Part shown: positions 1-34,025 of the stretch, piece after piece | Layout: each line of letters starts with the position of its first letter | Numbering within the stretch: position 1 is the first letter of the stretch | Sequence record: NC_074635.1 | Strand: one strand, 5' to 3' | DNA length: 34,025 nucleotides | Notes under the pieces: model-generated | Database searches by the model: none | Told to the model about the DNA's origin: nothing | The model's input: only the letters and a program-made list of their open reading frames with translations | Program-made: the position numbers and the translations under genes

Positions 1-2
1 GC

Positions 3-114
3 TCCTAAATTCCTAAATTCCTAAATTAGGAATTTCCAAAATTCCAAATTTCCTAATTTCCTAACTTCCTAAATTCCAAAATTCCTAAGTTCCTAATTTC
101 CTAAGTTCCTAAAT
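3..114 (+). repeat. Terminal octamer array (TCCTAAAT-type), likely hairpin-end/replication origin region
   Basis: 14 in-phase 8-mers: 13 direct TCC(T/A)AAN(T) variants plus one inverted unit at 27-34. The reverse complement resembles the rudivirus terminal consensus AATTTAGGAATTTAGGAATTT. Confidence 0.85.
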
Positions 115-705
115 TACAATTTTTTGCATTTTTCAGGTAAATTGCATGAAAAATGAGAAATATTCAAACTTCCTAATTTACAATTAATCTGTCATTTTGC
201 GTAATTTGCACAATTTAGTAAAAATATTCTAAATTTGTAATTTCCTAAATTACAATAAAATGTACATTCTGTGCAATTTATTAAAATTGTAAAATTGTAA
301 AATTGGAAATGATAAATCTTTTCAATTTTTAATTGGAAATGTAGAAATATTTGTAAGTTTGTAAGTTTGTAAAAATTTAACATTTTTAGATTTTTATCTA
401 CCCAACTTGAAAATATATAATTATTTATATTTAGTTTTTTTCGACTTGGGTGAAAAAAATTGTAGTAAAATCTCGTGCGAAATATTAAAATTTACTAAAC
501 ATATTTCTAGTTTATATATAGTTATGCATATTGCACAATTTTAATACTTTCAGTCTAAACGATTTAGTATTTTTTTACTTTCAGTCTTTATGATATTGTA
601 AGATTGAAAGATTTATTAAATTCATTTTACAGTTTTTACGGTTGAAATGTAAGAAATTGAGGTTTTAGAAAGAAAAGTTTAAATAGTGCGAAGCCAAAAG
701 TTATT

Positions 706-825
706 ATGAGTAGCCAAGATTATGCTTCGCCATTTATTATCTATTATAAAAAAATATTAAAAAATTTTCAAATTATCAAATTAAAATATTTTCAATTTGC
801 GTTATTTTCCGTAAACGTAAAATAA
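706..825 (+). CDS. Possible 39-aa ITR-encoded peptide (or ncRNA), left copy
   Basis: Hand translation MSSQDYASPFIIYYKKILKNFQIIKLKYFQFALFSVNVK. Preceded by AGAAAGAAAAG-TTTAAATA (BRE/TATA-like, 667-685) and followed by a T-tract. Confidence 0.3.
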   Translation: MSSQDYASPFIIYYKKILKNFQIIKLKYFQFALFSVNVK

Positions 826-1254
826 CGCATTTTTTGTTTTTTTATTTTTTTGTTTTTAAACCTTAAACCGTTCTTTACTGAGGTTGAAAAAATCGCTCGG
901 TTGAAGAAATTTTATGTTGATAATGTTGAAAAGATTTTAAATAAATAAATGATATATGTTAATATATAATTATATTGCGTATATAGCTATATTATAATAT
1001 AGTATATAGTTATATTACATATTTATGTATATAGTTATATTTTAGTTTAAGCATATTGCACGTATATTATGCGTATATTGCGTACAAGTTATGTTATACT
1101 ATAATATTAGTATATTAGTATATTTTAGTTTGGGGGATATGCATAGGCATGCATATTTTATATTTTTTCAGGCGTTCTTACTTCTCGAATTCAAATCGTT
1201 TAGGTGAGATGAAAGAAAATGGAGAGAAAGAGAAGAAGAAAGAAAGTTAAGCAA

Positions 1255-1279
1255 GATAGAAAGATTTATATACTAGTTT
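1255..1279 (+). promoter_or_regulatory. Conserved early-type promoter, copy 1
   Basis: GATAGAAAGATTTATATACTAGTTT (BRE + TATA + YTWGTTT), with near-identical copies at 30741, 31689, 32265 and 32747. Confidence 0.8.
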
Positions 1280-1307
1280 GGCAAGATATAATATAGGGAT
1301 GAAAAAG

Positions 1308-1685
1308 ATGAAAGAGAAAGTTTCGTATAAAAATGTTCAAAAAGAAGTCCAAATAAAAGACACAATAAATATGATTGAAAAATTCTTAGATATTGAGTTT
1401 GCGATAGAGAGAGTAGATTTGTTAGATGTGCAAGACAATATAATAAAGATTGATTATGAGATTTACGGGATACATACACAATATACTTATGATGTAAGTC
1501 AAGAAATAGTCAAGAAGTTCAATCCAGATTATGTTAGTGGATATCCAGAAAGTGTTGAGCAATTTGAGTGGCTGATAGGTTCTGATGAAGTTAACGGTTA
1601 CAAGGTACAATATCTCAAAGTCTTGACAATTGATCATGTCAAACACGAGATATTGATGAAGAATCGTTTGTTAATCTTTAAGTAA
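1308..1685 (+). CDS. Hypothetical protein (~125 aa), candidate early anti-defence gene
   Basis: ORF track gives 1278..1685. The ATG at 1308 follows GGGATGAAAAAG, matching the AGGTGAAAAAG-ATG layout of a sister promoter. No family recognised. Confidence 0.75.
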   Translation: MKEKVSYKNVQKEVQIKDTINMIEKFLDIEFAIERVDLLDVQDNIIKIDYEIYGIHTQYTYDVSQEIVKKFNPDYVSGYPESVEQFEWLIGSDEVNGYKVQYLKVLTIDHVKHEILMKNRLLIFK

Positions 1686-2804: not shown

Positions 2805-4046
2805 ATGGTAGATAAAGAATTTACAAGAAAAAGTTCTGGAATTATAAAATCATTAAGTGCAAAAGATTTTTTTAATTTAAATTTACTTTACATGGGAATA
2901 ACTTCAGGAGCTAGTTATCCACTTCTAATTTATTTGTCTTTACCTTCTGCTAACGCTTTTCTATCAGTTTTAATTAGTATTTTGCTTAATCTTCCACTTT
3001 TAATAATGTATTATTATTTAACTCTGAAATTTCCGCAAAATGGTGGAGATTATAATTATATTTTAAAAGCTTTTAATCAAAAAATTGCCTCAATATTTGG
3101 TATAACAATATTATTAGTTTATGCATTTTCTCAGCCGATTTTATCAAGTTTAGAATTATCGCTAGGTTTAGACTTAAAAAACGTTCAATTTTGGATGACT
3201 GAAATCGTAATAATTGTTGGACTACTAATAGTTTTAAATCGTCAAGTTTTCAGATATATGCTATCACTTTTTACAATTTTACAACTTGTTCAAGTAGGAA
3301 TAATATTATATGTTTTATTAATTGCTCATAGTTTTTCAAATTTAGTTAATTTTAGTCTGCGAAGCGCAATGTCATTAGCAATTATTTATAGTTTTTCAAC
3401 ATTTATGTTTATAAATTCACCAAGTTATTTAGCTGGTGAAAGTAAAAATGCTAAAAAATCATTTTTATGGGGATATTTTGGCGCTTATTTTATCGTTGGG
3501 ATGTTAATAGCTTTAATTTCATTGCTTTCTCCATCAAATATTTACTTTATAGCTCTAATTAATTCAGTTTTGCATAGCTATAAAGTTTTAATAATCATAA
3601 ATATGATAGCTTCAACAACTTGGTATTTTTCATATCTTTTAATAAATCAAACGATTGTAAGTAGATTAATCCAACAAATGTCTTTTGACAATATTTTACA
3701 TTCAATGTTTACAAATATGAAATACGTATTATTTTTACTAATGTTACCGATAGTTACAGTTTTGAATTTTATAGAAAATTACTTAGGAATTACTGTAAAT
3801 TTTGCTACAGATGGCTTATTTTTCTTAATTTTAAATTACTTAATTGTTTCGCTTTCAGCTTTAAAGTTATCAAATGTTTTAACGTCTGATGCTAAAAAAA
3901 TAAAAATATTTTCAGTATTGACAATTATAAGTATAATCTTTCAAAGTGCTTATTATGAAATATTTTTAAGGTTTTCAACTCAAAACATTTGGATAATTTT
4001 TATATTTCCCGTAATTGCTTTAATTTATACAATGCTTAAAAGGTGA
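2805..4046 (+). CDS. APC-superfamily amino acid permease-like membrane protein
   Basis: About 11-12 hydrophobic segments. FPQNGGDY resembles the P-x-x-GG-x-Y motif and LAGESKNAKKS resembles the AEE-x-KNP-x-R motif of APC permeases. ATG at 2805 preferred over TTG at 2799. Confidence 0.75.
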   Translation: MVDKEFTRKSSGIIKSLSAKDFFNLNLLYMGITSGASYPLLIYLSLPSANAFLSVLISILLNLPLLIMYYYLTLKFPQNGGDYNYILKAFNQKIASIFGITILLVYAFSQPILSSLELSLGLDLKNVQFWMTEIVIIVGLLIVLNRQVFRYMLSLFTILQLVQVGIILYVLLIAHSFSNLVNFSLRSAMSLAIIYSFSTFMFINSPSYLAGESKNAKKSFLWGYFGAYFIVGMLIALISLLSPSNIYFIALINSVLHSYKVLIIINMIASTTWYFSYLLINQTIVSRLIQQMSFDNILHSMFTNMKYVLFLLMLPIVTVLNFIENYLGITVNFATDGLFFLILNYLIVSLSALKLSNVLTSDAKKIKIFSVLTIISIIFQSAYYEIFLRFSTQNIWIIFIFPVIALIYTMLKR

Positions 4047-5537: not shown

Positions 5538-6848
5538 ATGAACGAGGAAAGTAGTTACAAATTTCTTCAGGTCTTTAATCAACATTCTTTTTTATATAAT
5601 CCAAGAGATCAAAATAGATTTTTATCTTTGATTATCGGAGAAAAACAAATTGATGAAGAGAAGAAAATAAAAATTTTAAAAGCTTTTGAAGCGGGTACAA
5701 ATTCGCAATATTTTCAATCAAAATTAGCATTTGAAGATGAAGTGAAAATCATAACTAAAATTGTAAGTTTTAAAGAAAAAAATGGCGAAATTGTAGCTAA
5801 ATTTCAAAATGGTTTTATTGGAAAATTTGATCCTCATCTTATAGCAAATAATCCTGATGATTTCTATAATTTGTTACAAACTTTAATGTTTGTAAAAATA
5901 AGAAATAAGCAAATTGAAGATATTTATTCAATTGAGCCTGAAAATAACTATGAAATTGCGAAAGAATTATTTGAAATTGCAGACCAAGAGAATCAACTTT
6001 ATGCTTTACTTTTACAATCTTTTGGCTATGATATTTCTAGAATGGAACCGACAGATATTCTATTAACTTTGCCTAGATTATTTTCGCTTTTTTATTCTCC
6101 AATTTCAAAAAGAAGAATAAATTATATTGAAATTTCAAATAGAGGTACTGCAAAGACGACAACATTTACAATTTTGCAAGAATTTTTCAATTATAGATAT
6201 TATACTGAAGCACCGACTTATGCTAATTTAGTTTATGATGCGAGAAATAATATGTATGGTGCAGTATTTCTATCAAACGGTTTAATTTTTGATGAAATTC
6301 AAAATTGGAAAGAGGCAAAAATGAAGGCAGATGTTGAAATAATTAATTCTACGCTTTCAACCGGATTAGAAAATTGTATTTGGACAAGAGGAGCGGGAGC
6401 GGAATCAAATTTTGCAGTTGTGCATAAATGCCTACCGATAATTTATGCTGGCAATCCGATAAGTTATACTTTAACTGGTTTGCAAAAATATGAAATTGAA
6501 GAATATTTAGATCAATATAAAGTATTTAGTTATGCAATTTTAGATAGAATTCATATTATTCAATTAGCAGTTAAAAAAACTTATGATAAAATTGTCAATG
6601 GAAAAGTTCTTTATCCTAGCGTTTTAAGGGCTTTAGTTGAATTAATTCAACAAAAAATTAACAAAATTACAGATTATATAATTTGTGATAATTTTCAATC
6701 TAGAAGATTTGAGCAATCTGTTGATATACAAATTTTATTAAAAGCTTTAAATATTGATTTATTGCCTCCTGATAGAGAAAAAGAAGAATTTTGTAAACAA
6801 TTAGAGTTTTACATGAGATTTTCAAATCTTGAAGGTGGTGTGAGATGA
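5538..6848 (+). CDS. AAA+/P-loop ATPase (SIRV2 gp18/ORF436-like)
   Basis: 436 aa with a variant Walker A (SNRGTAKTT), Walker B (LIFDE) and an ILDR arginine-finger-like motif. Confidence 0.88.
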   Translation: MNEESSYKFLQVFNQHSFLYNPRDQNRFLSLIIGEKQIDEEKKIKILKAFEAGTNSQYFQSKLAFEDEVKIITKIVSFKEKNGEIVAKFQNGFIGKFDPHLIANNPDDFYNLLQTLMFVKIRNKQIEDIYSIEPENNYEIAKELFEIADQENQLYALLLQSFGYDISRMEPTDILLTLPRLFSLFYSPISKRRINYIEISNRGTAKTTTFTILQEFFNYRYYTEAPTYANLVYDARNNMYGAVFLSNGLIFDEIQNWKEAKMKADVEIINSTLSTGLENCIWTRGAGAESNFAVVHKCLPIIYAGNPISYTLTGLQKYEIEEYLDQYKVFSYAILDRIHIIQLAVKKTYDKIVNGKVLYPSVLRALVELIQQKINKITDYIICDNFQSRRFEQSVDIQILLKALNIDLLPPDREKEEFCKQLEFYMRFSNLEGGVR

Positions 6849-7471
6849 CGTATGAAGATATTATTAAAAAAGCATTTGTTCGAGTTTACGATAAAAATAC
6901 AATATTTCCTAGTGAAATTGGAATATGTGTAAGGAGAAGCTATTTTATGAGGCAAGGCGAAGTACGACTAACTAATGTAACTGAAGAAATGGATATTGGA
7001 ACTGTTTATCATAATGATATAGAAATTAAAATGAGAGATGATCTACATTGTGAGACAGAAGTAAAAGTTGAAGGTGAAATTGAAAATATAAAAATTTCAG
7101 GTAGAATTGATGCAATTTGCAAAACTGATCTTCTTGAATTTAAAATAACTGGATATATACCATTTTCACCAAAGATTTATCATTTACAACAAGTAGCAAT
7201 ATATTACTATTTACTTTCTAAACAAAATAGAAAAATTGATAATGTTTATATTATCTATATTAAAAGAGGGACGTTAGAAGTCAAAGAATTTTTAATCACA
7301 CGTGAGGTTTTAAATTATGCCTTTGAAAATGCGGTTGATTTTATTAAAAAGTTTAAAATTGCAATTGAGAAAAACGATTATAGCTTTATACCTTTAGCAG
7401 ATGCATCATTTTGTAAAAATTGCATATTTAAAAATAAATGTTACGGTGGAATTGATTCATTTCTAAAATAA
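6845..7471 (+). CDS. Cas4-like RecB-family nuclease (SIRV2 gp19/ORF207-like)
   Basis: PSEIGICVRRSYF, GRID...LEFK, QVAIY and C-terminal CKNCIFKNKC (four Fe-S Cys). ATGA-type overlap with the ATPase stop. Confidence 0.9.
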   Translation: MTYEDIIKKAFVRVYDKNTIFPSEIGICVRRSYFMRQGEVRLTNVTEEMDIGTVYHNDIEIKMRDDLHCETEVKVEGEIENIKISGRIDAICKTDLLEFKITGYIPFSPKIYHLQQVAIYYYLLSKQNRKIDNVYIIYIKRGTLEVKEFLITREVLNYAFENAVDFIKKFKIAIEKNDYSFIPLADASFCKNCIFKNKCYGGIDSFLK

Positions 7472-8654: not shown

Positions 8655-9542
8655 TTATTTTTTTGAGTTTAATATTTCTCTAGCTGACTTGAAAGCTAAT
8701 TTCATTTCTTCTATAAGCGAGTCTTCTCCAAGTCTTTTTAAAGAGCGTAGATAGTAGTAATATTTTTCATTTATCATTTCTTCACTATATTGTAAAACCC
8801 AAACGTTTATTTTAGCTACATCCTTATAACTATCAAATTTAATTTCGTAAGGGAAGTTAGTTTTTTCCAAAAAATCAATTAATTCGTTTACTCGTTCTTT
8901 AAATTTTTTATTTGTAGGATGATAATCTCTTCCATCTGGGAAAATTACACGTCTAAGACCAGACAGATGAATATGTATAGATGTATCTAACTGGTTTGCA
9001 TCTAAAAAAAGCGTTTTTGTTTTCGCTCCTGGCATGCCTAAAACATGTAACCAATTTACCTTGCGTTTTACATAAACATAAAATGGCAAAGTATACAAAA
9101 AGACATCATTTTTGCTAGAAGCTACAAATCCTCCCATAGCTAAATAATTAGTATATTGTCTATAGAAGTCAATTGCAAAATCTAAATCACTTTTAGTATA
9201 CATGTGGACAATTGGAATAATTTTTTCAGCTTCTTCAAATTTTGTCCACAAAAATTCAAACCAATCAAAATTTCTATTATCAACATGGTCAAAAAGTGTA
9301 GGATAATCAAGGGAAAAAAACATTAATTTGTTAGATTGTTGAGCTAATTGTTTATATTTTTTTAATACTTCTTCTGGTTTAATTTGCATGCCTTGTAATA
9401 TTATTTGATATCCACCACTATCTATAAGCGTTTCATTTTTCCACCAAATTTCATCAATTTTTAATTGATTAATTAGGACTGGGAAATTTAAATCAAATAA
9501 AAATTCATATTTTCTGCCATATTCAAAGAAAATTTTCATCAA
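8655..9542 (-). CDS. tRNA-guanine transglycosylase (TGT/DpdA)-like TIM-barrel protein
   Basis: LIDSGGYQI, FSLDYP, PIVH, LHVLG and LDTS correspond to TGT-family motifs. No C-terminal Zn-binding CxCxxC. Confidence 0.8.
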   Translation of the reverse strand: MMKIFFEYGRKYEFLFDLNFPVLINQLKIDEIWWKNETLIDSGGYQIILQGMQIKPEEVLKKYKQLAQQSNKLMFFSLDYPTLFDHVDNRNFDWFEFLWTKFEEAEKIIPIVHMYTKSDLDFAIDFYRQYTNYLAMGGFVASSKNDVFLYTLPFYVYVKRKVNWLHVLGMPGAKTKTLFLDANQLDTSIHIHLSGLRRVIFPDGRDYHPTNKKFKERVNELIDFLEKTNFPYEIKFDSYKDVAKINVWVLQYSEEMINEKYYYYLRSLKRLGEDSLIEEMKLAFKSAREILNSKK

Positions 9543-11620: not shown

Positions 11621-12433
11621 ATGAAATTGTCAGATTTTGATGTTTTCGATTGTTTTTTTAGTGGCGGTAGAGATTCAGCGTTAACGTGTTATATTGCATA
11701 TAAAGTTTCTAAAGTATTAAATAAAAATTTTAGACTTATTCATATTGATACTAAAATAGCAATATCAGAAACTAAAGAATATGTAAAAAGATACGCAGAT
11801 TGGTTAAATGCAGAGTTAAAAATAGTACAAACACAATATGATTATTTTGAATTTGTAAAAAAATATGGATATCCTTCAGTAATTAAAAATAGGTGGTGTT
11901 GGCGATTTTTAAAACAAGAGCCATTATATCAATTTAAAATCGAAGAAATAAAAGAAAAAATAAATCCTTTATGGATCCTAGGTATTAGGAGAAATGAAAG
12001 TTTATTTAGACTAGAAAATTATGGAAAAATAACTAATACATTAAAACGAGGTATGATTAAGAATTTACATGTAGTAGAATGGCTACCAATATTATATTTA
12101 TCAGGTGAAGAAGTTGATAGACTTATAAATAAATTTAAAATTCCAATAAATCCCGTATGGAAAAAAATTGGAATAAGTGGAGAATGTCTATGCCTAGCGG
12201 GGACAACAAAAAAGAAATTAGAAGCGCTTTTTATAAATTATCCAGATATTGCTCAAAAGTTTTATGAATTTGATAAATCTTTAATACCTAAAAGAGAAGG
12301 TAATTTGATTCCATTAGGTCTATTAAATGATAAAAAACGATTGCATAAATTTATTGAAGAAATACAAAATAAGAAAAACCAACCTACTATAGATGAATAT
12401 TTTGCATGTCAGGGTGCATGTTTTAATTTGTAA
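11621..12433 (+). CDS. PAPS-reductase/DndC-like PP-loop protein
   Basis: FSGGRDS (PP-loop), HIDT, RWCWRFLKQEP, LGIRRNES, ISGECLC and C-terminal CQGAC. Confidence 0.85.
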   Translation: MKLSDFDVFDCFFSGGRDSALTCYIAYKVSKVLNKNFRLIHIDTKIAISETKEYVKRYADWLNAELKIVQTQYDYFEFVKKYGYPSVIKNRWCWRFLKQEPLYQFKIEEIKEKINPLWILGIRRNESLFRLENYGKITNTLKRGMIKNLHVVEWLPILYLSGEEVDRLINKFKIPINPVWKKIGISGECLCLAGTTKKKLEALFINYPDIAQKFYEFDKSLIPKREGNLIPLGLLNDKKRLHKFIEEIQNKKNQPTIDEYFACQGACFNL

Positions 12434-25581: not shown

Positions 25582-25758
25582 TTAAAATCTTATTTTTTCA
25601 ACTCTTGCTTTTGGTATAGTCTCATTTTTTAATTCTTCCTTTATCATTTTTTCTATTGCTCTTCTTATCACTTCTGACCTATTTAAACCATGTTTTATGG
25701 CATAACTATCTACTAACTCTAATAGTTCGTCTTGTATTTTGAATGTTACGACCTTCAT
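25582..25758 (-). CDS. CopG-family RHH regulator (58 aa); missed by ORF track
   Basis: Hand translation MKVVTFKIQDELLELVDSYAIKHGLNRSEVIRRAIEKMIKEELKNETIPKARVEKIRF: classic Sulfolobales RHH, GGTGA SD. Confidence 0.9.
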   Translation of the reverse strand: MKVVTFKIQDELLELVDSYAIKHGLNRSEVIRRAIEKMIKEELKNETIPKARVEKIRF

Positions 25759-25941
25759 CTTTTCACCAATATTATATTCTACAAGATAATACTTAAAGCT
25801 TTCTTTCTTGTTTTATGTCAGTATAACGTCATACTACATAATGCGTATTACTCCAACAATCTTAAAATTCATAATCATATTAATATGTATATGTCTTTTT
25901 TGCATTGAGAAAATATAATCTTTAAAATTGAAAATTATTAT

Positions 25942-29956: not shown

Positions 29957-30313
29957 TCAATTTTTCATAACTACATCAATTAACAATATATTTTTATTTG
30001 TAAAATCTATATCAATTTCTTTTATAAATGTATATTTTTCATCTTTTTTCTTAAAGAACATAAACATATGATAAGTCTTGTCAAACATATCAGTATGATA
30101 ATCGCTTTTCATTGAGAGAAGATATTTAAAAACTTTATTAATATTGTCTACATGTATTATCTTATATACTCTTTCAAATTGATCCCTGATTTCTTCATTA
30201 TAACCGTCTTGCAATAATATTTTATCATCTATATTTTCACTATTTTCATTTTTTAAAAAAGGCATATTAAAAAATTGTTGAATCTCATATTTTACTTCTT
30301 CTAGTTTACTCAT
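29957..30313 (-). CDS. Hypothetical protein (118 aa)
   Basis: Clean ORF with AAAAGTTTAAATG promoter; no family recognised. Confidence 0.7.
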   Translation of the reverse strand: MSKLEEVKYEIQQFFNMPFLKNENSENIDDKILLQDGYNEEIRDQFERVYKIIHVDNINKVFKYLLSMKSDYHTDMFDKTYHMFMFFKKKDEKYTFIKEIDIDFTNKNILLIDVVMKN

Positions 30314-30492
30314 AGTTCATCAACAAAATAAATAGATAGAATACACATTTAAACTTTTAATTTACAATCATGATTAACTATAAAGTGAAAAAAATGACAT
30401 ATTATAAATTACCTTGGGAAGAAATAGATTGCAAAGCTATAGAACTAAAAAATAAGATGTTAAATAAAAAACAATATATAAATAGAAAACTA

Positions 30493-30711
30493 TTAAGCTG
30501 AGTTACGCTTAGTTAGTAATATAAATTTATCATAAGCACGCTGATAGTCAAATCCGTGAAAATAAAAAATTTTACGATTATCAGATGATAGCTTATAAAC
30601 TGCATAACGCTTACATTCAGGATCTTTTGCCAAAAAAACATTATTAGATTGCTTAATTACTTCTGAAAAATTGTAATATAAAACATTTAGAACGATTAGT
30701 TTTTTACTCAT
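30493..30711 (-). CDS. Hypothetical protein (72 aa), candidate anti-defence gene
   Basis: Early-type promoter at 30741-30765 and AGGTGA SD. Confidence 0.75.
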   Translation of the reverse strand: MSKKLIVLNVLYYNFSEVIKQSNNVFLAKDPECKRYAVYKLSSDNRKIFYFHGFDYQRAYDKFILLTKRNSA

Positions 30712-30740
30712 CTTCTATTTCACCTAATATACTATATATA

Positions 30741-30765
30741 AAACAAGTATATAAAGCTTTCTTTC
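30741..30765 (-). promoter_or_regulatory. Conserved early-type promoter, copy 2
   Basis: GAAAGAAAGCTTTATATACTTGTTT. Confidence 0.8.
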
Positions 30766-30805
30766 TAAGCTTTCAAGAAAGAAAAAATGAAAGAATATAA
30801 TCACT

Positions 30806-30841
30806 TTCAATTTATCTATTCAAAATGAGAAAAATTATCGA
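30806..30841 (-). repeat. 36-nt intergenic repeat (partner at 1734-1769)
   Basis: 34/36 identical to the left copy. Confidence 0.85.
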
Positions 30842-30859
30842 CAAAAAAATAGAAAAAAA

Positions 30860-31168
30860 TTACTGAAGATTGAGACAAAGATACTTTTTCATTCTTTTCG
30901 TGACGGGATTTTGCATTTGTTTGACCGTCAGGACGCCAGCCTTTATCATTTTCTGTAACAATCTCAATGCCCAATACTGGTAGGCATTTGATGTGTATCT
31001 GTAAATATAAATGCGCCCATCTGAGTCATAAAACGGCACACATACTGAATTGTTGTCAATTATCTTGTTTTCATCATATAGTATTCTTTTGATTGCGTCA
31101 ACTCTTTTTGAAGTAGCTTTAAGATTGTATTTATGTAGTAACTGAACAATTTGTTCTTCATTAAGCAT
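30860..31168 (-). CDS. Winged-helix-like protein (Fur-like N-terminus)
   Basis: LLHKYNLKATSKRVDAIKRIL resembles Fur helices 1-2; LRLLQKMIKAGVL resembles the recognition helix plus wing. Confidence 0.6.
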   Translation of the reverse strand: MLNEEQIVQLLHKYNLKATSKRVDAIKRILYDENKIIDNNSVCVPFYDSDGRIYIYRYTSNAYQYWALRLLQKMIKAGVLTVKQMQNPVTKRMKKYLCLNLQ

Positions 31169-31660
31169 TTATTCTTCACCTCTATTTAATAATAGATCTT
31201 CTACATATTCAATCAATGGTAAATGTTCTTTGTTAGAAATTAGCAATTGTCTAATATTCTCAGGAAGATTGTAAATTTCATTCGCTGGACTTTTCATATC
31301 ATATAGTTTCCATTTTTGTAATTCTTTCACTAAACCCTCACTAGTTACTTCTATCACTCTTACGTAAATATACACATTACCGAGATTACTTCTTTCAGCT
31401 TGATATTGTAAATATTTTGCTGGAAAGACAAAGTAGTTAATAGTACCATGACGACCTGATTTGCTAGTGTGTAGATGCGCCTTAACTGGTTGTTTTGTCC
31501 TAAATGATATTAGCACAGTGTCGCTTACTGCTCTCATTGATGTCCTTCGAAACTCAAACTCTAACTTTATCGGTTTAAGGTTTTGTCCCTTTGAGGTGGG
31601 AGTTTGTAAAAAATCTCCCATCTCAGTGGGACTTAAATTTTGTTTTTCTTCTTGTCCCAT
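31169..31660 (-). CDS. Putative AcrIIIB1-family (SIRV2 gp48-like) anti-CRISPR
   Basis: ISFRTKQ...SKSGRHG.INYFVFPAKY and NLPENIRQLL recall the S-x-R-[ST]-K...SK-x-G-x-HG...Y...P-x-x-Y pattern I remember for AcrIIIB1. Early-type promoter and a position near the right end fit. Confidence 0.55.
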   Translation of the reverse strand: MGQEEKQNLSPTEMGDFLQTPTSKGQNLKPIKLEFEFRRTSMRAVSDTVLISFRTKQPVKAHLHTSKSGRHGTINYFVFPAKYLQYQAERSNLGNVYIYVRVIEVTSEGLVKELQKWKLYDMKSPANEIYNLPENIRQLLISNKEHLPLIEYVEDLLLNRGEE

Positions 31661-31688
31661 ACCTTTCACCTCTAATTTACTATATGTA

Positions 31689-31713
31689 AAACAAGTATAT
31701 AAATCTTTCTATC
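31689..31713 (-). promoter_or_regulatory. Conserved early-type promoter, copy 3
   Basis: GATAGAAAGATTTATATACTTGTTT (24/25 identical to the ITR copy). Confidence 0.82.
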
Positions 31714-31751
31714 ATAAACTTTTAATAATGTAAGATTGCAAATTTAAAAGT

Positions 31752-32054
31752 ATGGAAAATGAAACACTAAAAATGATTGTAAAAATTCTAGAAAAACATC
31801 AAAACATCTTCTATCATCTAGTATTCGCTAACGAAAAAGAAATAGAGATATTTTTAGAACCACTTTTAGAACAAAAACAATTAATAAAATTGCTAAATGA
31901 CATAAAAAGTATAATTGATATTGATAATATAAGAATTTATAACTTTTTAGATTTAAGAGAAATACAATTTATGAAAGAATATAAAATAGTTTTAAGCATA
32001 ATGGTAATAGAAAAAGAAAATAAAAAGTATAATACAAAAATAATTATATATTAA
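31752..32054 (+). CDS. Hypothetical protein (100 aa)
   Basis: TTTAATAAT-GTAAGA promoter 22 nt upstream; divergent from the Acr-like gene. Confidence 0.7.
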   Translation: MENETLKMIVKILEKHQNIFYHLVFANEKEIEIFLEPLLEQKQLIKLLNDIKSIIDIDNIRIYNFLDLREIQFMKEYKIVLSIMVIEKENKKYNTKIIIY

Positions 32055-32064
32055 AAAAAATAAC

Positions 32065-32238
32065 TTACCAACATTCAGAAATATATTTTCTAACTTTTTT
32101 CTCACTAACGCCTAAAATCGAAGCAATTTGTTTAACTGAATAGCCTTTACGTGCTAATTCATGAGTTAATGAAATTTCATCATCTTCGCTTTCTATGTAA
32201 TATCTTGTTTGACCAATTTGAACTATTTTTTGACTCAT
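32065..32238 (-). CDS. Small HTH protein (SIRV1 ORF55-like)
   Basis: RYYIESEDD...HELARKGYSVKQIASILGVSEKKVRKYI: clear HTH, closely resembling the SIRV ORF55 family as I recall it. Early-type promoter. Confidence 0.88.
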   Translation of the reverse strand: MSQKIVQIGQTRYYIESEDDEISLTHELARKGYSVKQIASILGVSEKKVRKYISECW

Positions 32239-32264
32239 CTTTTTCACCTAATTATAATGTTGTC

Positions 32265-32289
32265 AAACTAATATTTAAAGCTTTCTATC
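32265..32289 (-). promoter_or_regulatory. Conserved early-type promoter, copy 4
   Basis: GATAGAAAGCTTTAAATATTAGTTT. Confidence 0.8.
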
Positions 32290-32412
32290 TTTATTTACTT
32301 TGAATCTCCTCTTCTCTCTCTAGAGAAAAAGTTAGGCATAAAAAAATGAATAAATGAAAACTACAAGAAATAAAAACTAGAAAATTTAAACCGAGAAAAC
32401 AAAAAAAGAAAT

Positions 32413-32718
32413 TTAATATCTTGAGAAATAAATATAATCTGAATCTTCAGTATAAAGTCTCTTTGAAAATCTATAATAATTTTCTACTAAAATATCTTGA
32501 ATTCTATCAAAATTAATTTTGTTTGCATAGAAACTTAAAGAGATATTTGCTACATTTACAACAATACTAATTGACCAAACATTTATTTGCACTTCTGAAG
32601 GTTTCTTAGACTTCAATAATTTTTCTAACTTTTTGAAATTTTTTTCGTCTTGTTCTTTCTGCCAAGAAAAATAAGGTGTGTAATCAAAAACTATTGGGCT
32701 TTCAACTTTCTCTTTCAT
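32413..32718 (-). CDS. Hypothetical protein (~101 aa), candidate early anti-defence gene
   Basis: Starts inside the right ITR (MKEKV) and continues in unique sequence. Confidence 0.75.
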   Translation of the reverse strand: MKEKVESPIVFDYTPYFSWQKEQDEKNFKKLEKLLKSKKPSEVQINVWSISIVVNVANISLSFYANKINFDRIQDILVENYYRFSKRLYTEDSDYIYFSRY

Positions 32719-32746
32719 CTTTTTCATCCCTATATTATATCTTGCC

Positions 32747-32771
32747 AAACTAGTATATAAATCTTTCTATC
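32747..32771 (-). promoter_or_regulatory. Conserved early-type promoter, copy 5 (ITR mirror of copy 1)
   Basis: GATAGAAAGATTTATATACTAGTTT. Confidence 0.8.
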
Positions 32772-33200
32772 TTGCTTAACTTTCTTTCTTCTTCTCTTTC
32801 TCTCCATTTTCTTTCATCTCACCTAAACGATTTGAATTCGAGAAGTAAGAACGCCTGAAAAAATATAAAATATGCATGCCTATGCATATCCCCCAAACTA
32901 AAATATACTAATATACTAATATTATAGTATAACATAACTTGTACGCAATATACGCATAATATACGTGCAATATGCTTAAACTAAAATATAACTATATACA
33001 TAAATATGTAATATAACTATATACTATATTATAATATAGCTATATACGCAATATAATTATATATTAACATATATCATTTATTTATTTAAAATCTTTTCAA
33101 CATTATCAACATAAAATTTCTTCAACCGAGCGATTTTTTCAACCTCAGTAAAGAACGGTTTAAGGTTTAAAAACAAAAAAATAAAAAAACAAAAAATGCG

Positions 33201-33320
33201 TTATTTTACGTTTACGGAAAATAACGCAAATTGAAAATATTTTAATTTGATAATTTGAAAATTTTTTAATATTTTTTTATAATAGATAATAAATGGCGAA
33301 GCATAATCTTGGCTACTCAT
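33201..33320 (-). CDS. Possible 39-aa ITR-encoded peptide, right copy
   Basis: Mirror of 706..825. Confidence 0.3.
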   Translation of the reverse strand: MSSQDYASPFIIYYKKILKNFQIIKLKYFQFALFSVNVK

Positions 33321-33911
33321 AATAACTTTTGGCTTCGCACTATTTAAACTTTTCTTTCTAAAACCTCAATTTCTTACATTTCAACCGTAAAAACTGTAAA
33401 ATGAATTTAATAAATCTTTCAATCTTACAATATCATAAAGACTGAAAGTAAAAAAATACTAAATCGTTTAGACTGAAAGTATTAAAATTGTGCAATATGC
33501 ATAACTATATATAAACTAGAAATATGTTTAGTAAATTTTAATATTTCGCACGAGATTTTACTACAATTTTTTTCACCCAAGTCGAAAAAAACTAAATATA
33601 AATAATTATATATTTTCAAGTTGGGTAGATAAAAATCTAAAAATGTTAAATTTTTACAAACTTACAAACTTACAAATATTTCTACATTTCCAATTAAAAA
33701 TTGAAAAGATTTATCATTTCCAATTTTACAATTTTACAATTTTAATAAATTGCACAGAATGTACATTTTATTGTAATTTAGGAAATTACAAATTTAGAAT
33801 ATTTTTACTAAATTGTGCAAATTACGCAAAATGACAGATTAATTGTAAATTAGGAAGTTTGAATATTTCTCATTTTTCATGCAATTTACCTGAAAAATGC
33901 AAAAAATTGTA

Positions 33912-34023
33912 ATTTAGGAACTTAGGAAATTAGGAACTTAGGAATTTTGGAATTTAGGAAGTTAGGAAATTAGGAAATTTGGAATTTTGGAAATTCCTAA
34001 TTTAGGAATTTAGGAATTTAGGA
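33912..34023 (-). repeat. Terminal octamer array, right end
   Basis: Mirror of 3..114. Confidence 0.85.
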
Positions 34024-34025
34024 GC

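What the first reader, a model, noticed from the sequence alone, without database searches (positions are those of the whole stretch)
30493..32771. Five-copy 25-nt early promoter marks a terminal anti-defence island
Seen: consensus GAWAGAAAGMTTTAWATAYTWGTTT at 1255, 30741, 31689, 32265 and 32747. Each copy is followed by an SD (AGGTGA or GGGATGA) and a small gene, all pointing inward from the genome ends, unlike the mostly leaderless GTAAGA-class genes. Known: characterised rudiviral acr genes are expressed immediately from strong conserved promoters near the termini, and such motifs have been used to predict anti-defence genes. Inference: ORFs 1308, 30493, 30860, 31169, 32065 and 32413 are an early anti-defence set. 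Three of them (1308, 30493, 32413) have no family I recognise and are candidates for new inhibitors of CRISPR or other systems.
Basis: partly seen in the sequence, partly recalled or inferred. Interest (0 to 1): 0.8.

Follow-up and report, generated by a model that had tools for sequence, protein, structure and literature searches.

The report
Known early anti-defence promoter set, SBRV1
The repeated 25-base motif is real and is the strong early promoter that rod-shaped archaeal viruses place in front of their counter-defence genes, but this exact gene set in this exact virus (SBRV1) was already predicted in a 2024 paper, so it is a correct rediscovery and not a new finding.

Summary
[quoted passage not shown] The motif is present exactly where stated (5 exact copies, 0 expected by chance). 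The copies at 1255 and 32747 lie inside the perfect 1322-bp inverted terminal repeat, so there are 4 independent copies. A sixth, degenerate copy (25783, minus strand) lies upstream of the internal ribbon-helix-helix gene gp41. The motif is a BRE (G at -6, A at -3) plus a TTTAWATA TATA box plus a conserved downstream element, followed about 23 nt later by a GGTGA ribosome-binding site. The whole ~55-nt module aligns with the experimentally early SIRV2 promoters of aca8, acrID1, acrIIIB1 and acrIA3. gp55 is Aca8 (69% identical to SIRV2 gp01), a regulator and not an inhibitor. gp52 belongs to the AcrIA3 family. gp51 belongs to a 7-member rudiviral family (ADG.08). gp05 and gp56 are true ORFans. 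Bhoobalan-Chitty et al. 2024 (PMC11065993) already list gp05, gp51, gp52, gp53, gp55, gp56 and gp41 as SBRV1 anti-defence or associated genes. My one addition concerns gp53 (ADG.11). It belongs to a metagenomic family with 53 representative matches at E<=1e-3 besides gp53 itself, one of them a repeat-protein false hit. It has the AFV1-ORF157 fold, and relatives recur beside AcrIA3-like, AcrIII-1 and AcrID1 genes. No function has been tested in SBRV1.

The parts
1..1322 (.). Left inverted terminal repeat. It ends inside the gp05 coding sequence.
   Evidence: Perfect identity with the reverse complement of 32704-34025; the first mismatch is at 1323.
1255..1279 (+). Early regulatory motif, ITR copy, driving gp05.
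   Evidence: Exact match; lies inside the ITR.
1299..1685 (+). gp05 (128 aa, or 125 aa from the second ATG at 1308). An ORFan; published as ADG.15.
   Evidence: No Pfam, PHROG, NCBIfam or PDB hit. No homologue among 5.8 billion proteins. Listed in PMC11065993.
25783..25807 (-). Degenerate sixth copy of the motif (TATA is TTTAAGTA), driving gp41.
   Evidence: 3-mismatch match. Same BRE/TATA-to-GGTGA-to-ATG geometry as the other copies.
25582..25758 (-). gp41, a ribbon-helix-helix (CopG) regulator; published as pADG.01, anti-defence associated.
   Evidence: Pfam RHH_1 E=7e-9 and phrog_876 E=8e-18; listed in the paper.
30741..30765 (-). Early regulatory motif driving gp51.
   Evidence: Exact match.
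30493..30711 (-). gp51 (72 aa), family ADG.08.
   Evidence: phrog_27628 E=4e-10. tblastn gives 40-43% identity to terminal ORFs of SIRV8/9/10 and isolates V3 and V60, plus a partial match in V65 (53% over 68% of gp51). Listed in the paper; all 7 family members carry the motif.
31689..31713 (-). Early regulatory motif driving the gp53-gp52 operon.
   Evidence: Exact match. gp53 and gp52 abut with no intergenic gap.
31169..31660 (-). gp53 (163 aa), ADG.11. A beta-rich protein with the AFV1-ORF157-like fold.
   Evidence: AF2 model pLDDT 80, pTM 0.74. Foldseek hit to 3II2, E=2.9e-5. BFVD hits to SBFV1 (E=1e-12) and SBFV2 gp08 (E=8e-7). hhalign probability 91%. HMMER lists 54 sequences at E<=1e-3, including gp53 itself and one repeat-protein false hit.
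30860..31168 (-). gp52 (102 aa), ADG.09. Homologue of SIRV2 gp47 (AcrIA3).
   Evidence: phrog_21188 E=1e-9; SIRV2 gp47 hits the same PHROG at E=1e-61. tblastn to SIRV1 E=4e-5 and to SIRV2 gp47 E=1e-2. Named as the SBRV1 AcrIA3 homologue in the preprint.
31752..32054 (+). gp54 (100 aa). It is interposed on the opposite strand and is driven by a GTAAGA-class promoter. It is not part of the regulon.
   Evidence: Upstream sequence. Not in the published ADG list. No AcrID1 similarity.
32265..32289 (-). Early regulatory motif driving gp55 (autoregulated aca8).
   Evidence: Exact match. blastn shows that the promoter and gene are conserved in SIRV viruses.
32065..32238 (-). gp55 (57 aa), Aca8: the HTH regulator of the early regulon.
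   Evidence: 69% identity to SIRV2 gp01, E=1e-29. phrog_7067 E=1e-31. HTH Pfam hits. Listed in the paper.
32747..32771 (-). Early regulatory motif, ITR copy, driving gp56.
   Evidence: Exact match; lies inside the ITR.
32413..32727 (-). gp56 (104 aa, or 101 aa from the second ATG). An ORFan; published as ADG.16.
   Evidence: No homologue. No significant family hits. Single-sequence AF2 model pLDDT 59, with no fold match.
32704..34025 (.). Right inverted terminal repeat. It ends inside the gp56 coding sequence.

Best explanation
These are the SBRV1 copies of the Aca8-type early regulatory sequence of rudiviruses.

Anatomy. Each copy has a maximal-strength archaeal core promoter: a purine-rich BRE with G at -6 and A at -3, abutting a TTTAWATA TATA box. 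This is followed by a conserved (Y)TWGTTT element, an A/T-rich spacer and a GGTGA Shine-Dalgarno site about 5-8 nt before the ATG.

Proposed sequence of events (inferred). Host TBP/TFB/RNA polymerase fire these promoters as soon as the linear genome enters the cell. This yields short-leader mRNAs for small proteins: gp05, gp51, gp53+gp52, gp56, and the regulators gp55/Aca8 and gp41. Aca8 then accumulates and is thought to bind the conserved non-core part of the module and shut the set off.

Cargo.
- gp52 is an AcrIA3-family protein. In SIRV2 this winged-HTH protein represses the host type I-A cas promoter.
- gp53 is co-transcribed with gp52. It has the AFV1-ORF157 fold but lacks a conserved catalytic residue. 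It is the best candidate for a protein-level inhibitor acting together with gp52.
- gp51, gp05 and gp56 are candidate inhibitors with unknown targets.

Shown here: the sequence anatomy, the homologies and the operon structure. Inferred: early timing, repression by Aca8, and every anti-defence activity.
For: Motif statistics and positions. The ITR analysis shows that gp05 and gp56 share the promoter and the first 8 codons.

An 11-promoter alignment of SBRV1 and SIRV2 has 73% mean column identity. The invariant columns lie in the BRE, the TATA box and the TT of GTTT, and the SD region is conserved. SIRV2 early promoters match the pattern with 2-3 mismatches, upstream of gp01, gp02, gp07, gp08, gp47 and gp48.

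gp55 is 69% identical to Aca8. gp52 is in phrog_21188 together with SIRV2 gp47.

The literature reports early transcription of SIRV2 genes with this sequence, the BRE rule, SBRV1 named as an Aca8 virus, and the ADG list (PMC11065993). AcrIA3 function is described in bioRxiv 10.1101/2024.04.02.587611.

Guilt by association comes from three places:
- L023 carries a gp53-like gene and a gp52-related gene, each behind a TAGAAAGCTTTAAATA promoter.
- L010 carries a gp53-family gene next to an AcrIII-1 homologue.
- AFV1-157 lies in an operon headed by an AcrID1 homologue, and SSV-RH A158 is ADGSSV.016.
Against: - SBRV1 has no transcriptome, no cultured host and no functional assay.
- Identical BRE/TATA cores also drive host housekeeping genes (PMC11065993), so the core alone does not imply early or anti-defence function.
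- Three of the seven cargo proteins are DNA-binding regulators, not obvious inhibitors.
- The gp52 to SIRV2 gp47 similarity is weak pairwise (E=1e-2), and AcrIA3 is so far described only in a preprint.
- No dyad-symmetric operator could be pinned down.
- The gp53 to AFV1-157 link is remote (TM about 0.5, 15% identity).
Confidence: 0.78

Rival explanations
1. The motif is a generic strong Sulfolobales promoter. The copies are simply maximal-strength BRE/TATA promoters for abundant viral proteins, with no shared temporal control and no link to defence.
For: The 2024 paper reports identical BRE/TATA in host genes such as cren7, slaA and the chaperonin gene. The exact 25-mer also occurs in three unrelated low-GC metagenome contigs.
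Against: Conservation extends about 35 nt beyond the core, through (Y)TWGTTT, the spacer and the SD, and is shared with SIRV2 early genes. The motif co-occurs with a 69%-identical Aca8 whose own gene carries it. The rest of the genome uses a different TATA+GTAAGA class.
Confidence: 0.1
2. The set is early, but for host takeover and not for counter-defence. The cargo would reprogramme transcription (gp41, gp52, gp55) and degrade host DNA (gp53 as an AFV1-157-type nuclease).
For: From my own knowledge, not checked here: AFV1-157 was described as a nuclease in vitro (Goulet et al. 2010). gp53 E113 aligns with its catalytic E86. Three cargo proteins are DNA binders.
Against: The E113 column is not conserved in the gp53 family (T in 8 of 18, E in 2 of 18), and no acidic residue is invariant. 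The gp52 homologue in SIRV2 specifically represses the cas promoter. gp53 relatives sit beside AcrIII-1, AcrID1 and AcrIA3-like genes.
Confidence: 0.1
3. The copies are leftovers of duplication or recombination between the genome ends, with no function.
For: Two copies are ITR duplicates.
Against: The other copies have unrelated flanks and unrelated downstream genes. Similarity is confined to the ~55 nt before each ATG, with a fixed register to the SD and ATG, and it is conserved in SIRV2.
Confidence: 0.02

Closest known systems
SIRV2 early regulatory sequence / Aca8 regulon (Bhoobalan-Chitty et al. 2024, Nat Commun, PMC11065993)
   Same: The BRE+TATA core, the TAGTTT element, the GGTGA leader and the terminal inward-pointing single small genes are the same. 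An aca8 gene under its own motif is also the same. SBRV1 is named in that paper, and the same genes are listed there.
   Different: SBRV1 has only 6 promoter copies. It has no AcrID1 or AcrIIIB1 homologue. The ITR boundary lies inside the first cargo gene on each side. One copy, upstream of gp41, is internal.
AcrIA3 (SIRV2 gp47; bioRxiv 10.1101/2024.04.02.587611)
   Same: gp52 falls in the same PHROG (phrog_21188). It lies in the right-arm island after the glycosyltransferase gene. It is immediately downstream of a larger early gene.
   Different: Pairwise similarity is low. gp52 is the second gene of an operon and does not have its own promoter. Its neighbour is gp53 (AFV1-157 fold), not AcrIIIB1/AcrIA4. 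Its activity has not been tested.
AFV1 ORF157 (PDB 3II2) / SSV-RH A158 (ADGSSV.016) / SBFV2 gp08
   Same: gp53 shares the fold (Foldseek E=2.9e-5). Profile-profile comparison gives 91% probability over 84 columns. The relatives lie in similar early or anti-defence operon contexts.
   Different: Identity is about 15%. The C-terminal helices differ. The catalytic Glu of AFV1-157 is not conserved across the gp53 family.
Bacteriophage acr-aca operons
   Same: Both have a strong promoter, small fast-evolving inhibitor genes, and an HTH repressor that is itself under the same promoter.
   Different: The SBRV1 promoter is of the archaeal BRE/TATA type. The genes are dispersed single-gene units sharing one regulatory module, not one operon. 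Aca8 is unrelated to the bacterial Aca families.

Membership tests
Rudiviral Aca8-type early (ADG) regulatory sequence | TATA box TTTAWATA preceded by a purine-rich BRE with G at -6 and A at -3. | tested here: met
   All five exact copies read GAAAG(A/C)|TTTAWATA. The gp41 copy has TTTAAGTA.
Rudiviral Aca8-type early (ADG) regulatory sequence | Flanking sequence around the core is shared among several genes of the same genome. | tested here: met
   YTWGTTT, the spacer and GGTGA are conserved in 5 unique copies, with 0 matches expected by chance.
Rudiviral Aca8-type early (ADG) regulatory sequence | Transcription immediately after infection, followed by repression. | not testable with these tools
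   Inferred only from SIRV2 data cited in PMC11065993.
Aca8 | A ~55-aa HTH protein homologous to the SIRV2 gp01/gp54 core. | tested here: met
   69% identity over 54 aa, E=1e-29. phrog_7067 E=1e-31. HTH Pfam hits.
Aca8 | Its own gene is preceded by the virus-specific early motif. | tested here: met
   Exact motif at 32265-32289, 26 nt upstream of the ATG at 32238.
Aca8 | Binds the regulatory sequence and represses the early genes. | not testable with these tools
   No binding data. No clear dyad operator was found by inspection.
AcrIA3 (SIRV2 gp47, ADG.09) | Sequence homology to SIRV2 gp47. | tested here: met
   gp52 hits phrog_21188 at E=1e-9, and gp47 hits the same PHROG at E=1e-61. tblastn to SIRV1 E=4e-5 and to SIRV2 E=1e-2.
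AcrIA3 (SIRV2 gp47, ADG.09) | Winged-HTH fold. | not tested
Sequence searches of Pfam and the PDB were silent.
AcrIA3 (SIRV2 gp47, ADG.09) | Represses the host type I-A cas promoter and inhibits I-A interference. | not testable with these tools
   Needs genetics in S. islandicus.
AFV1-ORF157 fold family | Structural similarity to PDB 3II2. | tested here: met
   Foldseek top PDB hit, E=2.9e-5, probability 1.0, TM 0.47-0.50 over 136 columns. BFVD link through SBFV2 gp08, E=8e-7.
AFV1-ORF157 fold family | Sequence-profile relationship. | tested here: met
   hhalign A2 vs A3: 91% probability, E=1e-6, 84 columns. The best PDB matches of the gp53-family profile are AFV1 ORF157 (3II2/3ILD/3ILE) and 3VB8, an engineered protein that Foldseek also returned; all are marginal at E=0.02-0.05.
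AFV1-ORF157 fold family | Catalytic Glu (E86 of AFV1-157). | tested here: inconclusive
   gp53 E113 aligns with E86, but the column is E in only 2 of 18 family members.
AcrIIIB1 (SIRV2 gp48) | Sequence homology to SIRV2 gp48. | tested here: not met
   BLASTP of gp53 against gp48 gives only short spurious segments. tblastn with gp48 finds 39 records, none of them SBRV1.
AcrID1 family | Profile similarity to SIRV2 gp03/gp45/gp46 and AFV1 ORF99. | tested here: not met
   hhalign probability is <=1.5% for gp05, gp56, gp54 and gp06.

The most novel reading that the evidence does not exclude
The gp53 family was published as a 3-member group with one motif-bearing gene. It would instead be a widespread family of archaeal-virus counter-defence proteins with the AFV1-157 fold. 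It would act as the protein-level partner of AcrIA3-type cas-promoter repressors, for example as a type I-A effector inhibitor. The two ORFans at the ITR junctions, gp05 and gp56, would be inhibitors of as yet unknown Sulfolobales defences.
Probability: 0.3. Interest if true: 0.55.

Novelty: already known. Interest (0 to 1): 0.25.

Why it matters
The finding shows that a reader of raw sequence can recover a true regulatory regulon. The prediction itself was published in 2024 for this same genome.

What remains of value is practical. SBRV1 is hit by 521 distinct CRISPR spacers (PMC6858448), yet it has no AcrID1 or AcrIIIB1 homologue. Its five untested early proteins are therefore good candidates for new inhibitors.

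Linking gp53 to the AFV1-157 fold and to a much larger metagenomic family gives a solved structure, and a wider set of sequences, to a previously near-orphan candidate.

Tried and rejected
1. I recalled that AcrIIIB1 was related to AFV1-157, which would have made gp53 a divergent AcrIIIB1. This was rejected. gp48 does not hit 3II2. tblastn with gp48 finds neither AFV1 nor SBRV1. BLASTP of gp53 against gp48 is spurious. No paper links the two.

2. AcrID1 membership of gp05, gp56, gp54 and gp06 was rejected by hhalign. gp54 and gp06 are not paralogues.

3. The single-sequence AF2 model of gp56 was poor (pLDDT 59), and its fold search gave nothing below E=0.3.

4. PADLOC gave weak hits of gp56 to the LmuB C-terminus (E=4e-5, 20 bits) and of gp05 to GajA (E=4e-3). 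Pfam and NCBIfam do not support them, and the N-terminus of gp56 is K/E-rich. I treat these as compositional hits, to be kept only as leads.

5. The Aca8 hits to the Csa3/CasR HTH are generic HTH similarity.

6. The search for related loci with gp51 in IMG/VR found nothing.

7. Motif scans of IMG/VR and the metagenomes found only SIRV4, SRV, one chance hit inside a phage structural gene (L008) and three short contigs.

8. I looked for a dyad operator in the module by eye and found none convincing.
Full report
[quoted passage not shown] The match is 100% over the full length, and the record is 34025 bp, the same length as the window. The deposited annotation has 60 CDS.

**The observation.** The degenerate 25-mer matches exactly at the five stated positions. 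None of 100 dinucleotide-preserving shuffles gave a match. Allowing 3 mismatches adds one site, 25783-25807 on the minus strand, 25 nt upstream of gp41, a ribbon-helix-helix protein.

The left end and the reverse complement of the right end are identical for 1322 bp and then diverge abruptly. The copies at 1255 and 32747 are therefore the same ITR sequence. There are four independent exact copies plus one degenerate copy.

The ITR ends inside the coding sequences. gp05 and gp56 share their promoter, their leader and their first eight codons (MKKMKEKV), and are unrelated thereafter.

Printing 70 nt upstream of all 60 genes confirms the SD claim. GGTGA lies 22-25 nt after the TATA box and 4-8 nt before the ATG for gp41, gp51, gp53 and gp55. 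In the ITR copy, GGGATGA occupies the same register. This favours the second in-frame ATG (1308 / 32718) as the start, although the first ATG would sit about where a leaderless transcript would begin.

The contrasting class is also real. A TATA box followed by GTAAGA lies 2-27 nt before 14 annotated starts, against 1.2 expected and a maximum of 5 in shuffles. gp52 has no motif. It abuts gp53 with no intergenic gap and has its own GGTGA, so it is the distal gene of a two-gene operon.

**What the motif is.** Read against the archaeal promoter rules quoted in PMC11065993, the motif has three parts:
- a purine-rich BRE with G at -6 and A at -3 (GAAAGM);
- the TATA box TTTAWATA;
- a further conserved element, (Y)TWGTTT.

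I extracted the corresponding regions of SIRV2. The SBRV1 pattern hits SIRV2 with 2-3 mismatches upstream of gp01/aca8 (inside the over-long annotated ORF, as the paper says), gp02, gp07, gp08, gp47/acrIA3 and gp48/acrIIIB1.

An alignment of five SBRV1 and six SIRV2 modules, from the BRE to the ATG, has 73% mean column identity. The invariant columns lie in the BRE, the TATA box and the TT of GTTT, and the SD region is conserved. The genes behind these modules are mostly unrelated. This is the anatomy of the Aca8-type early regulatory sequence.

**The cargo.**
- *gp55* is 69% identical (E=1e-29) to the 55-aa core of SIRV2 gp01, which is Aca8. It hits phrog_7067 at E=1e-31; the PHROG label 'terminase small subunit' is a known mis-annotation of this HTH family. 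It is the regulator of the set, not an inhibitor.
- *gp52* hits phrog_21188 (E=1e-9), the PHROG that SIRV2 gp47 defines (E=1e-61). By tblastn it hits SIRV1 (E=4e-5) and SIRV2 gp47 (E=1e-2). A 2024 preprint shows SIRV2 gp47 to be AcrIA3, a winged-HTH repressor of the host type I-A cas promoter, and names an SBRV1 homologue.
- *gp51* hits phrog_27628 (E=4e-10). It is 40-43% identical to terminal ORFs of SIRV8/9/10 and isolates V3 and V60, with a partial match in V65. It is therefore not family-less.
- *gp05 and gp56* have no Pfam, PHROG, NCBIfam or PDB match. They have no homologue in the 5.8-billion-protein collection.

SBRV1 has no detectable AcrIIIB1. None of the small terminal proteins fits an AcrID1 profile.

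**Prior publication.** Bhoobalan-Chitty et al. 2024 (PMC11065993) derived this regulatory sequence from SIRV2 early genes. They used it to predict 354 anti-defence genes and name SBRV1 among the Aca8-carrying viruses analysed. Their Supplementary Data 1 lists the following for SBRV1:
- gp55 = Aca8
- gp51 = ADG.08
- gp52 = ADG.09
- gp53 = ADG.11
- gp05 = ADG.15
- gp56 = ADG.16
- gp41 = pADG.01 (RHH, anti-defence associated)
- gp03 = pADG.16

The finding is a correct rediscovery.

**What I could add: gp53.** A word-indexed search found only two metagenomic homologues. An exhaustive HMMER search with their alignment listed 54 representative sequences at E<=1e-3, 30 of them at E<=1e-10. The list includes gp53 itself and one repeat-protein false positive.

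An AlphaFold2 model built on the 3-sequence alignment is confident (pLDDT 80, pTM 0.74). It shows seven strands followed by C-terminal helices.
- Its best PDB match is 3II2, ORF157 of Acidianus filamentous virus 1 (E=2.9e-5, probability 1.0, TM about 0.5).
- In BFVD it matches an SBFV1 protein (E=1e-12, TM 0.71-0.84) and SBFV2 gp08 'putative nuclease' (E=8e-7). SBFV2 gp08 is itself a tblastn homologue of AFV1-157.
- Independently of the model, an 18-sequence gp53-family profile finds AFV1 ORF157 (3II2/3ILD/3ILE) and 3VB8, an engineered protein that Foldseek also returned, as its best PDB matches, at marginal E-values of 0.02-0.05.
- hhalign against AFV1-157 + SSV-RH A158 + SBFV2 gp08 gives 91% probability, E=1e-6, over 84 columns.

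From my own knowledge, not checked here, Glu86 of AFV1-157 was reported as essential for its nuclease activity (Goulet et al. 2010). It aligns with gp53 E113. That column is Glu in only 2 of 18 family members, and no acidic residue is invariant. A binding role is therefore more likely than catalysis.

The genomic context fits counter-defence:
- AFV1-157 lies in an operon headed by ORF99, an AcrID1 homologue.
- SSV-RH A158 is ADGSSV.016 in the T6 operon.
- On contig L010, a gp53-family gene lies next to a DUF1874/AcrIII-1 homologue that is 42% identical to AFV1 ORF116.
- On contig L023, a gp53-family gene and a gp52-related wHTH gene (45% identity over 42 aa; phrog_9113) sit side by side. Each is behind a TAGAAAGCTTTAAATA promoter with a GTGA leader.

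In SIRV2, AcrIA3 sits next to the unrelated AcrIIIB1/AcrIA4. The preprint expects the SBRV1 AcrIA3 homologue to need a second I-A inhibitor. gp53 is the obvious candidate. The 2024 paper counted only 3 homologues for ADG.11, and a text search of that paper and its supplements for 'ORF157' and '3II2' found nothing.

**Mechanism.**
- Shown here: the promoter anatomy, the shared module, the operon structure and the homologies.
- Inferred: the host basal machinery fires these promoters at genome entry. Aca8, and perhaps gp41, later bind the conserved non-core part of the module and shut them off. gp52 represses the host cas promoter while gp53 blocks an effector. gp51, gp05 and gp56 inhibit unknown targets.

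**Rivals.** I rate three alternatives low:
- a generic strong promoter, because of the extended conservation and the Aca8 linkage;
- early host-takeover genes, with gp53 acting as a nuclease, because the catalytic residue is not conserved;
- recombination debris, because the flanks are unrelated and the register to the SD and ATG is fixed.

**Verdict.** Novelty is already known. Interest is low, apart from the untested ORFans and the gp53 link.

Noticed in passing
window, 14 gene starts (e.g. 1830, 5031, 7917, 10257, 12645, 31730): A second promoter class: a TATA box directly followed by GTAAGA, 2-27 nt before 14 annotated starts (1.2 expected). Most are too close to the ATG for a leader, so the transcripts are probably leaderless middle/late ones. 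gp54, inside the island, belongs to this class.
   Followed up: partly
window 1299-1322 and 32704-32727: The perfect 1322-bp ITR ends inside gp05 and gp56. The two unrelated proteins therefore share promoter, leader and the first 8 codons. Promoter alignment favours the second in-frame ATG (1308 / 32718) as the start.
   Followed up: partly
L023 541-1639 (Logan SRR7903764 contig, 2163 bp): An unrelated short contig carries a gp53-family gene and a gp52-related wHTH gene side by side. Each lies behind a TAGAAAGCTTTAAATA-type promoter with a GTGA leader. This is the same module and cargo pair as in SBRV1.
   Followed up: partly
L010 32-1553 (Logan SRR5468438 contig): A gp53-family gene lies next to a DUF1874/AcrIII-1 homologue (42% identical to AFV1 ORF116).
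   Followed up: partly
L005 543-866 (ENA ERZ1669405 contig): The gene overlapping the end of a gp53 homologue is weakly similar to SBRV1 gp49 (29% over 49 aa, E=0.006). gp49 (29957-30313, minus strand) borders the island but has no early motif.
   Followed up: no
L026 392-416; L024 130-154; L025 822-846: The exact 25-nt motif occurs in three short low-GC metagenome contigs. L026 has the full motif-GGTGA-ATG layout. L024 drives an RHH-like 78-aa protein. Their origin is unknown.
   Followed up: partly
window 32413-32727 (gp56) and 1299-1685 (gp05): Weak PADLOC hits: gp56 to the C-terminal ~75 profile positions of LmuB (Lamassu), E=4e-5 and 3e-4; gp05 to the GajA ATPase region, E=4e-3. Pfam and NCBIfam do not support them, and they are possibly compositional. 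A defence-protein-fragment decoy is conceivable.
   Followed up: partly
window 706-948 (gp03) and its mirror copy gp58: A small ITR ORF lies behind a BRE/TATA (AGAAAGAAAAGTTTAAATA) that differs from the 25-mer by more than 3 mismatches. The 2024 paper lists it as pADG.16 with a possible sequencing error that truncates it.
   Followed up: no
window 2805-4046, 6845-7471, 8655-9539, 11621-12433: The annotated genome also carries a putative amino-acid transporter (gp09), a Cas4 nuclease (gp15), a queuine tRNA-ribosyltransferase-like gene (gp19) and a PAPS-reductase-like gene (gp23). The last two suggest a 7-deazaguanine DNA-modification route, another possible anti-restriction function outside the island.
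   Followed up: no
window 30370-30501 (gp50) and 25732-25908 (gp42): These annotated small ORFs overlap the 3' end of gp51 and the promoter and start of gp41, respectively. They have no promoter or SD signals and are probably not genes.
   Followed up: no
L008 1491-1512 (IMG/VR contig): The 22-nt core of the motif matches by chance inside a 553-aa structural gene of an unrelated virus. This is a reminder that the core alone is not diagnostic.
   Followed up: yes
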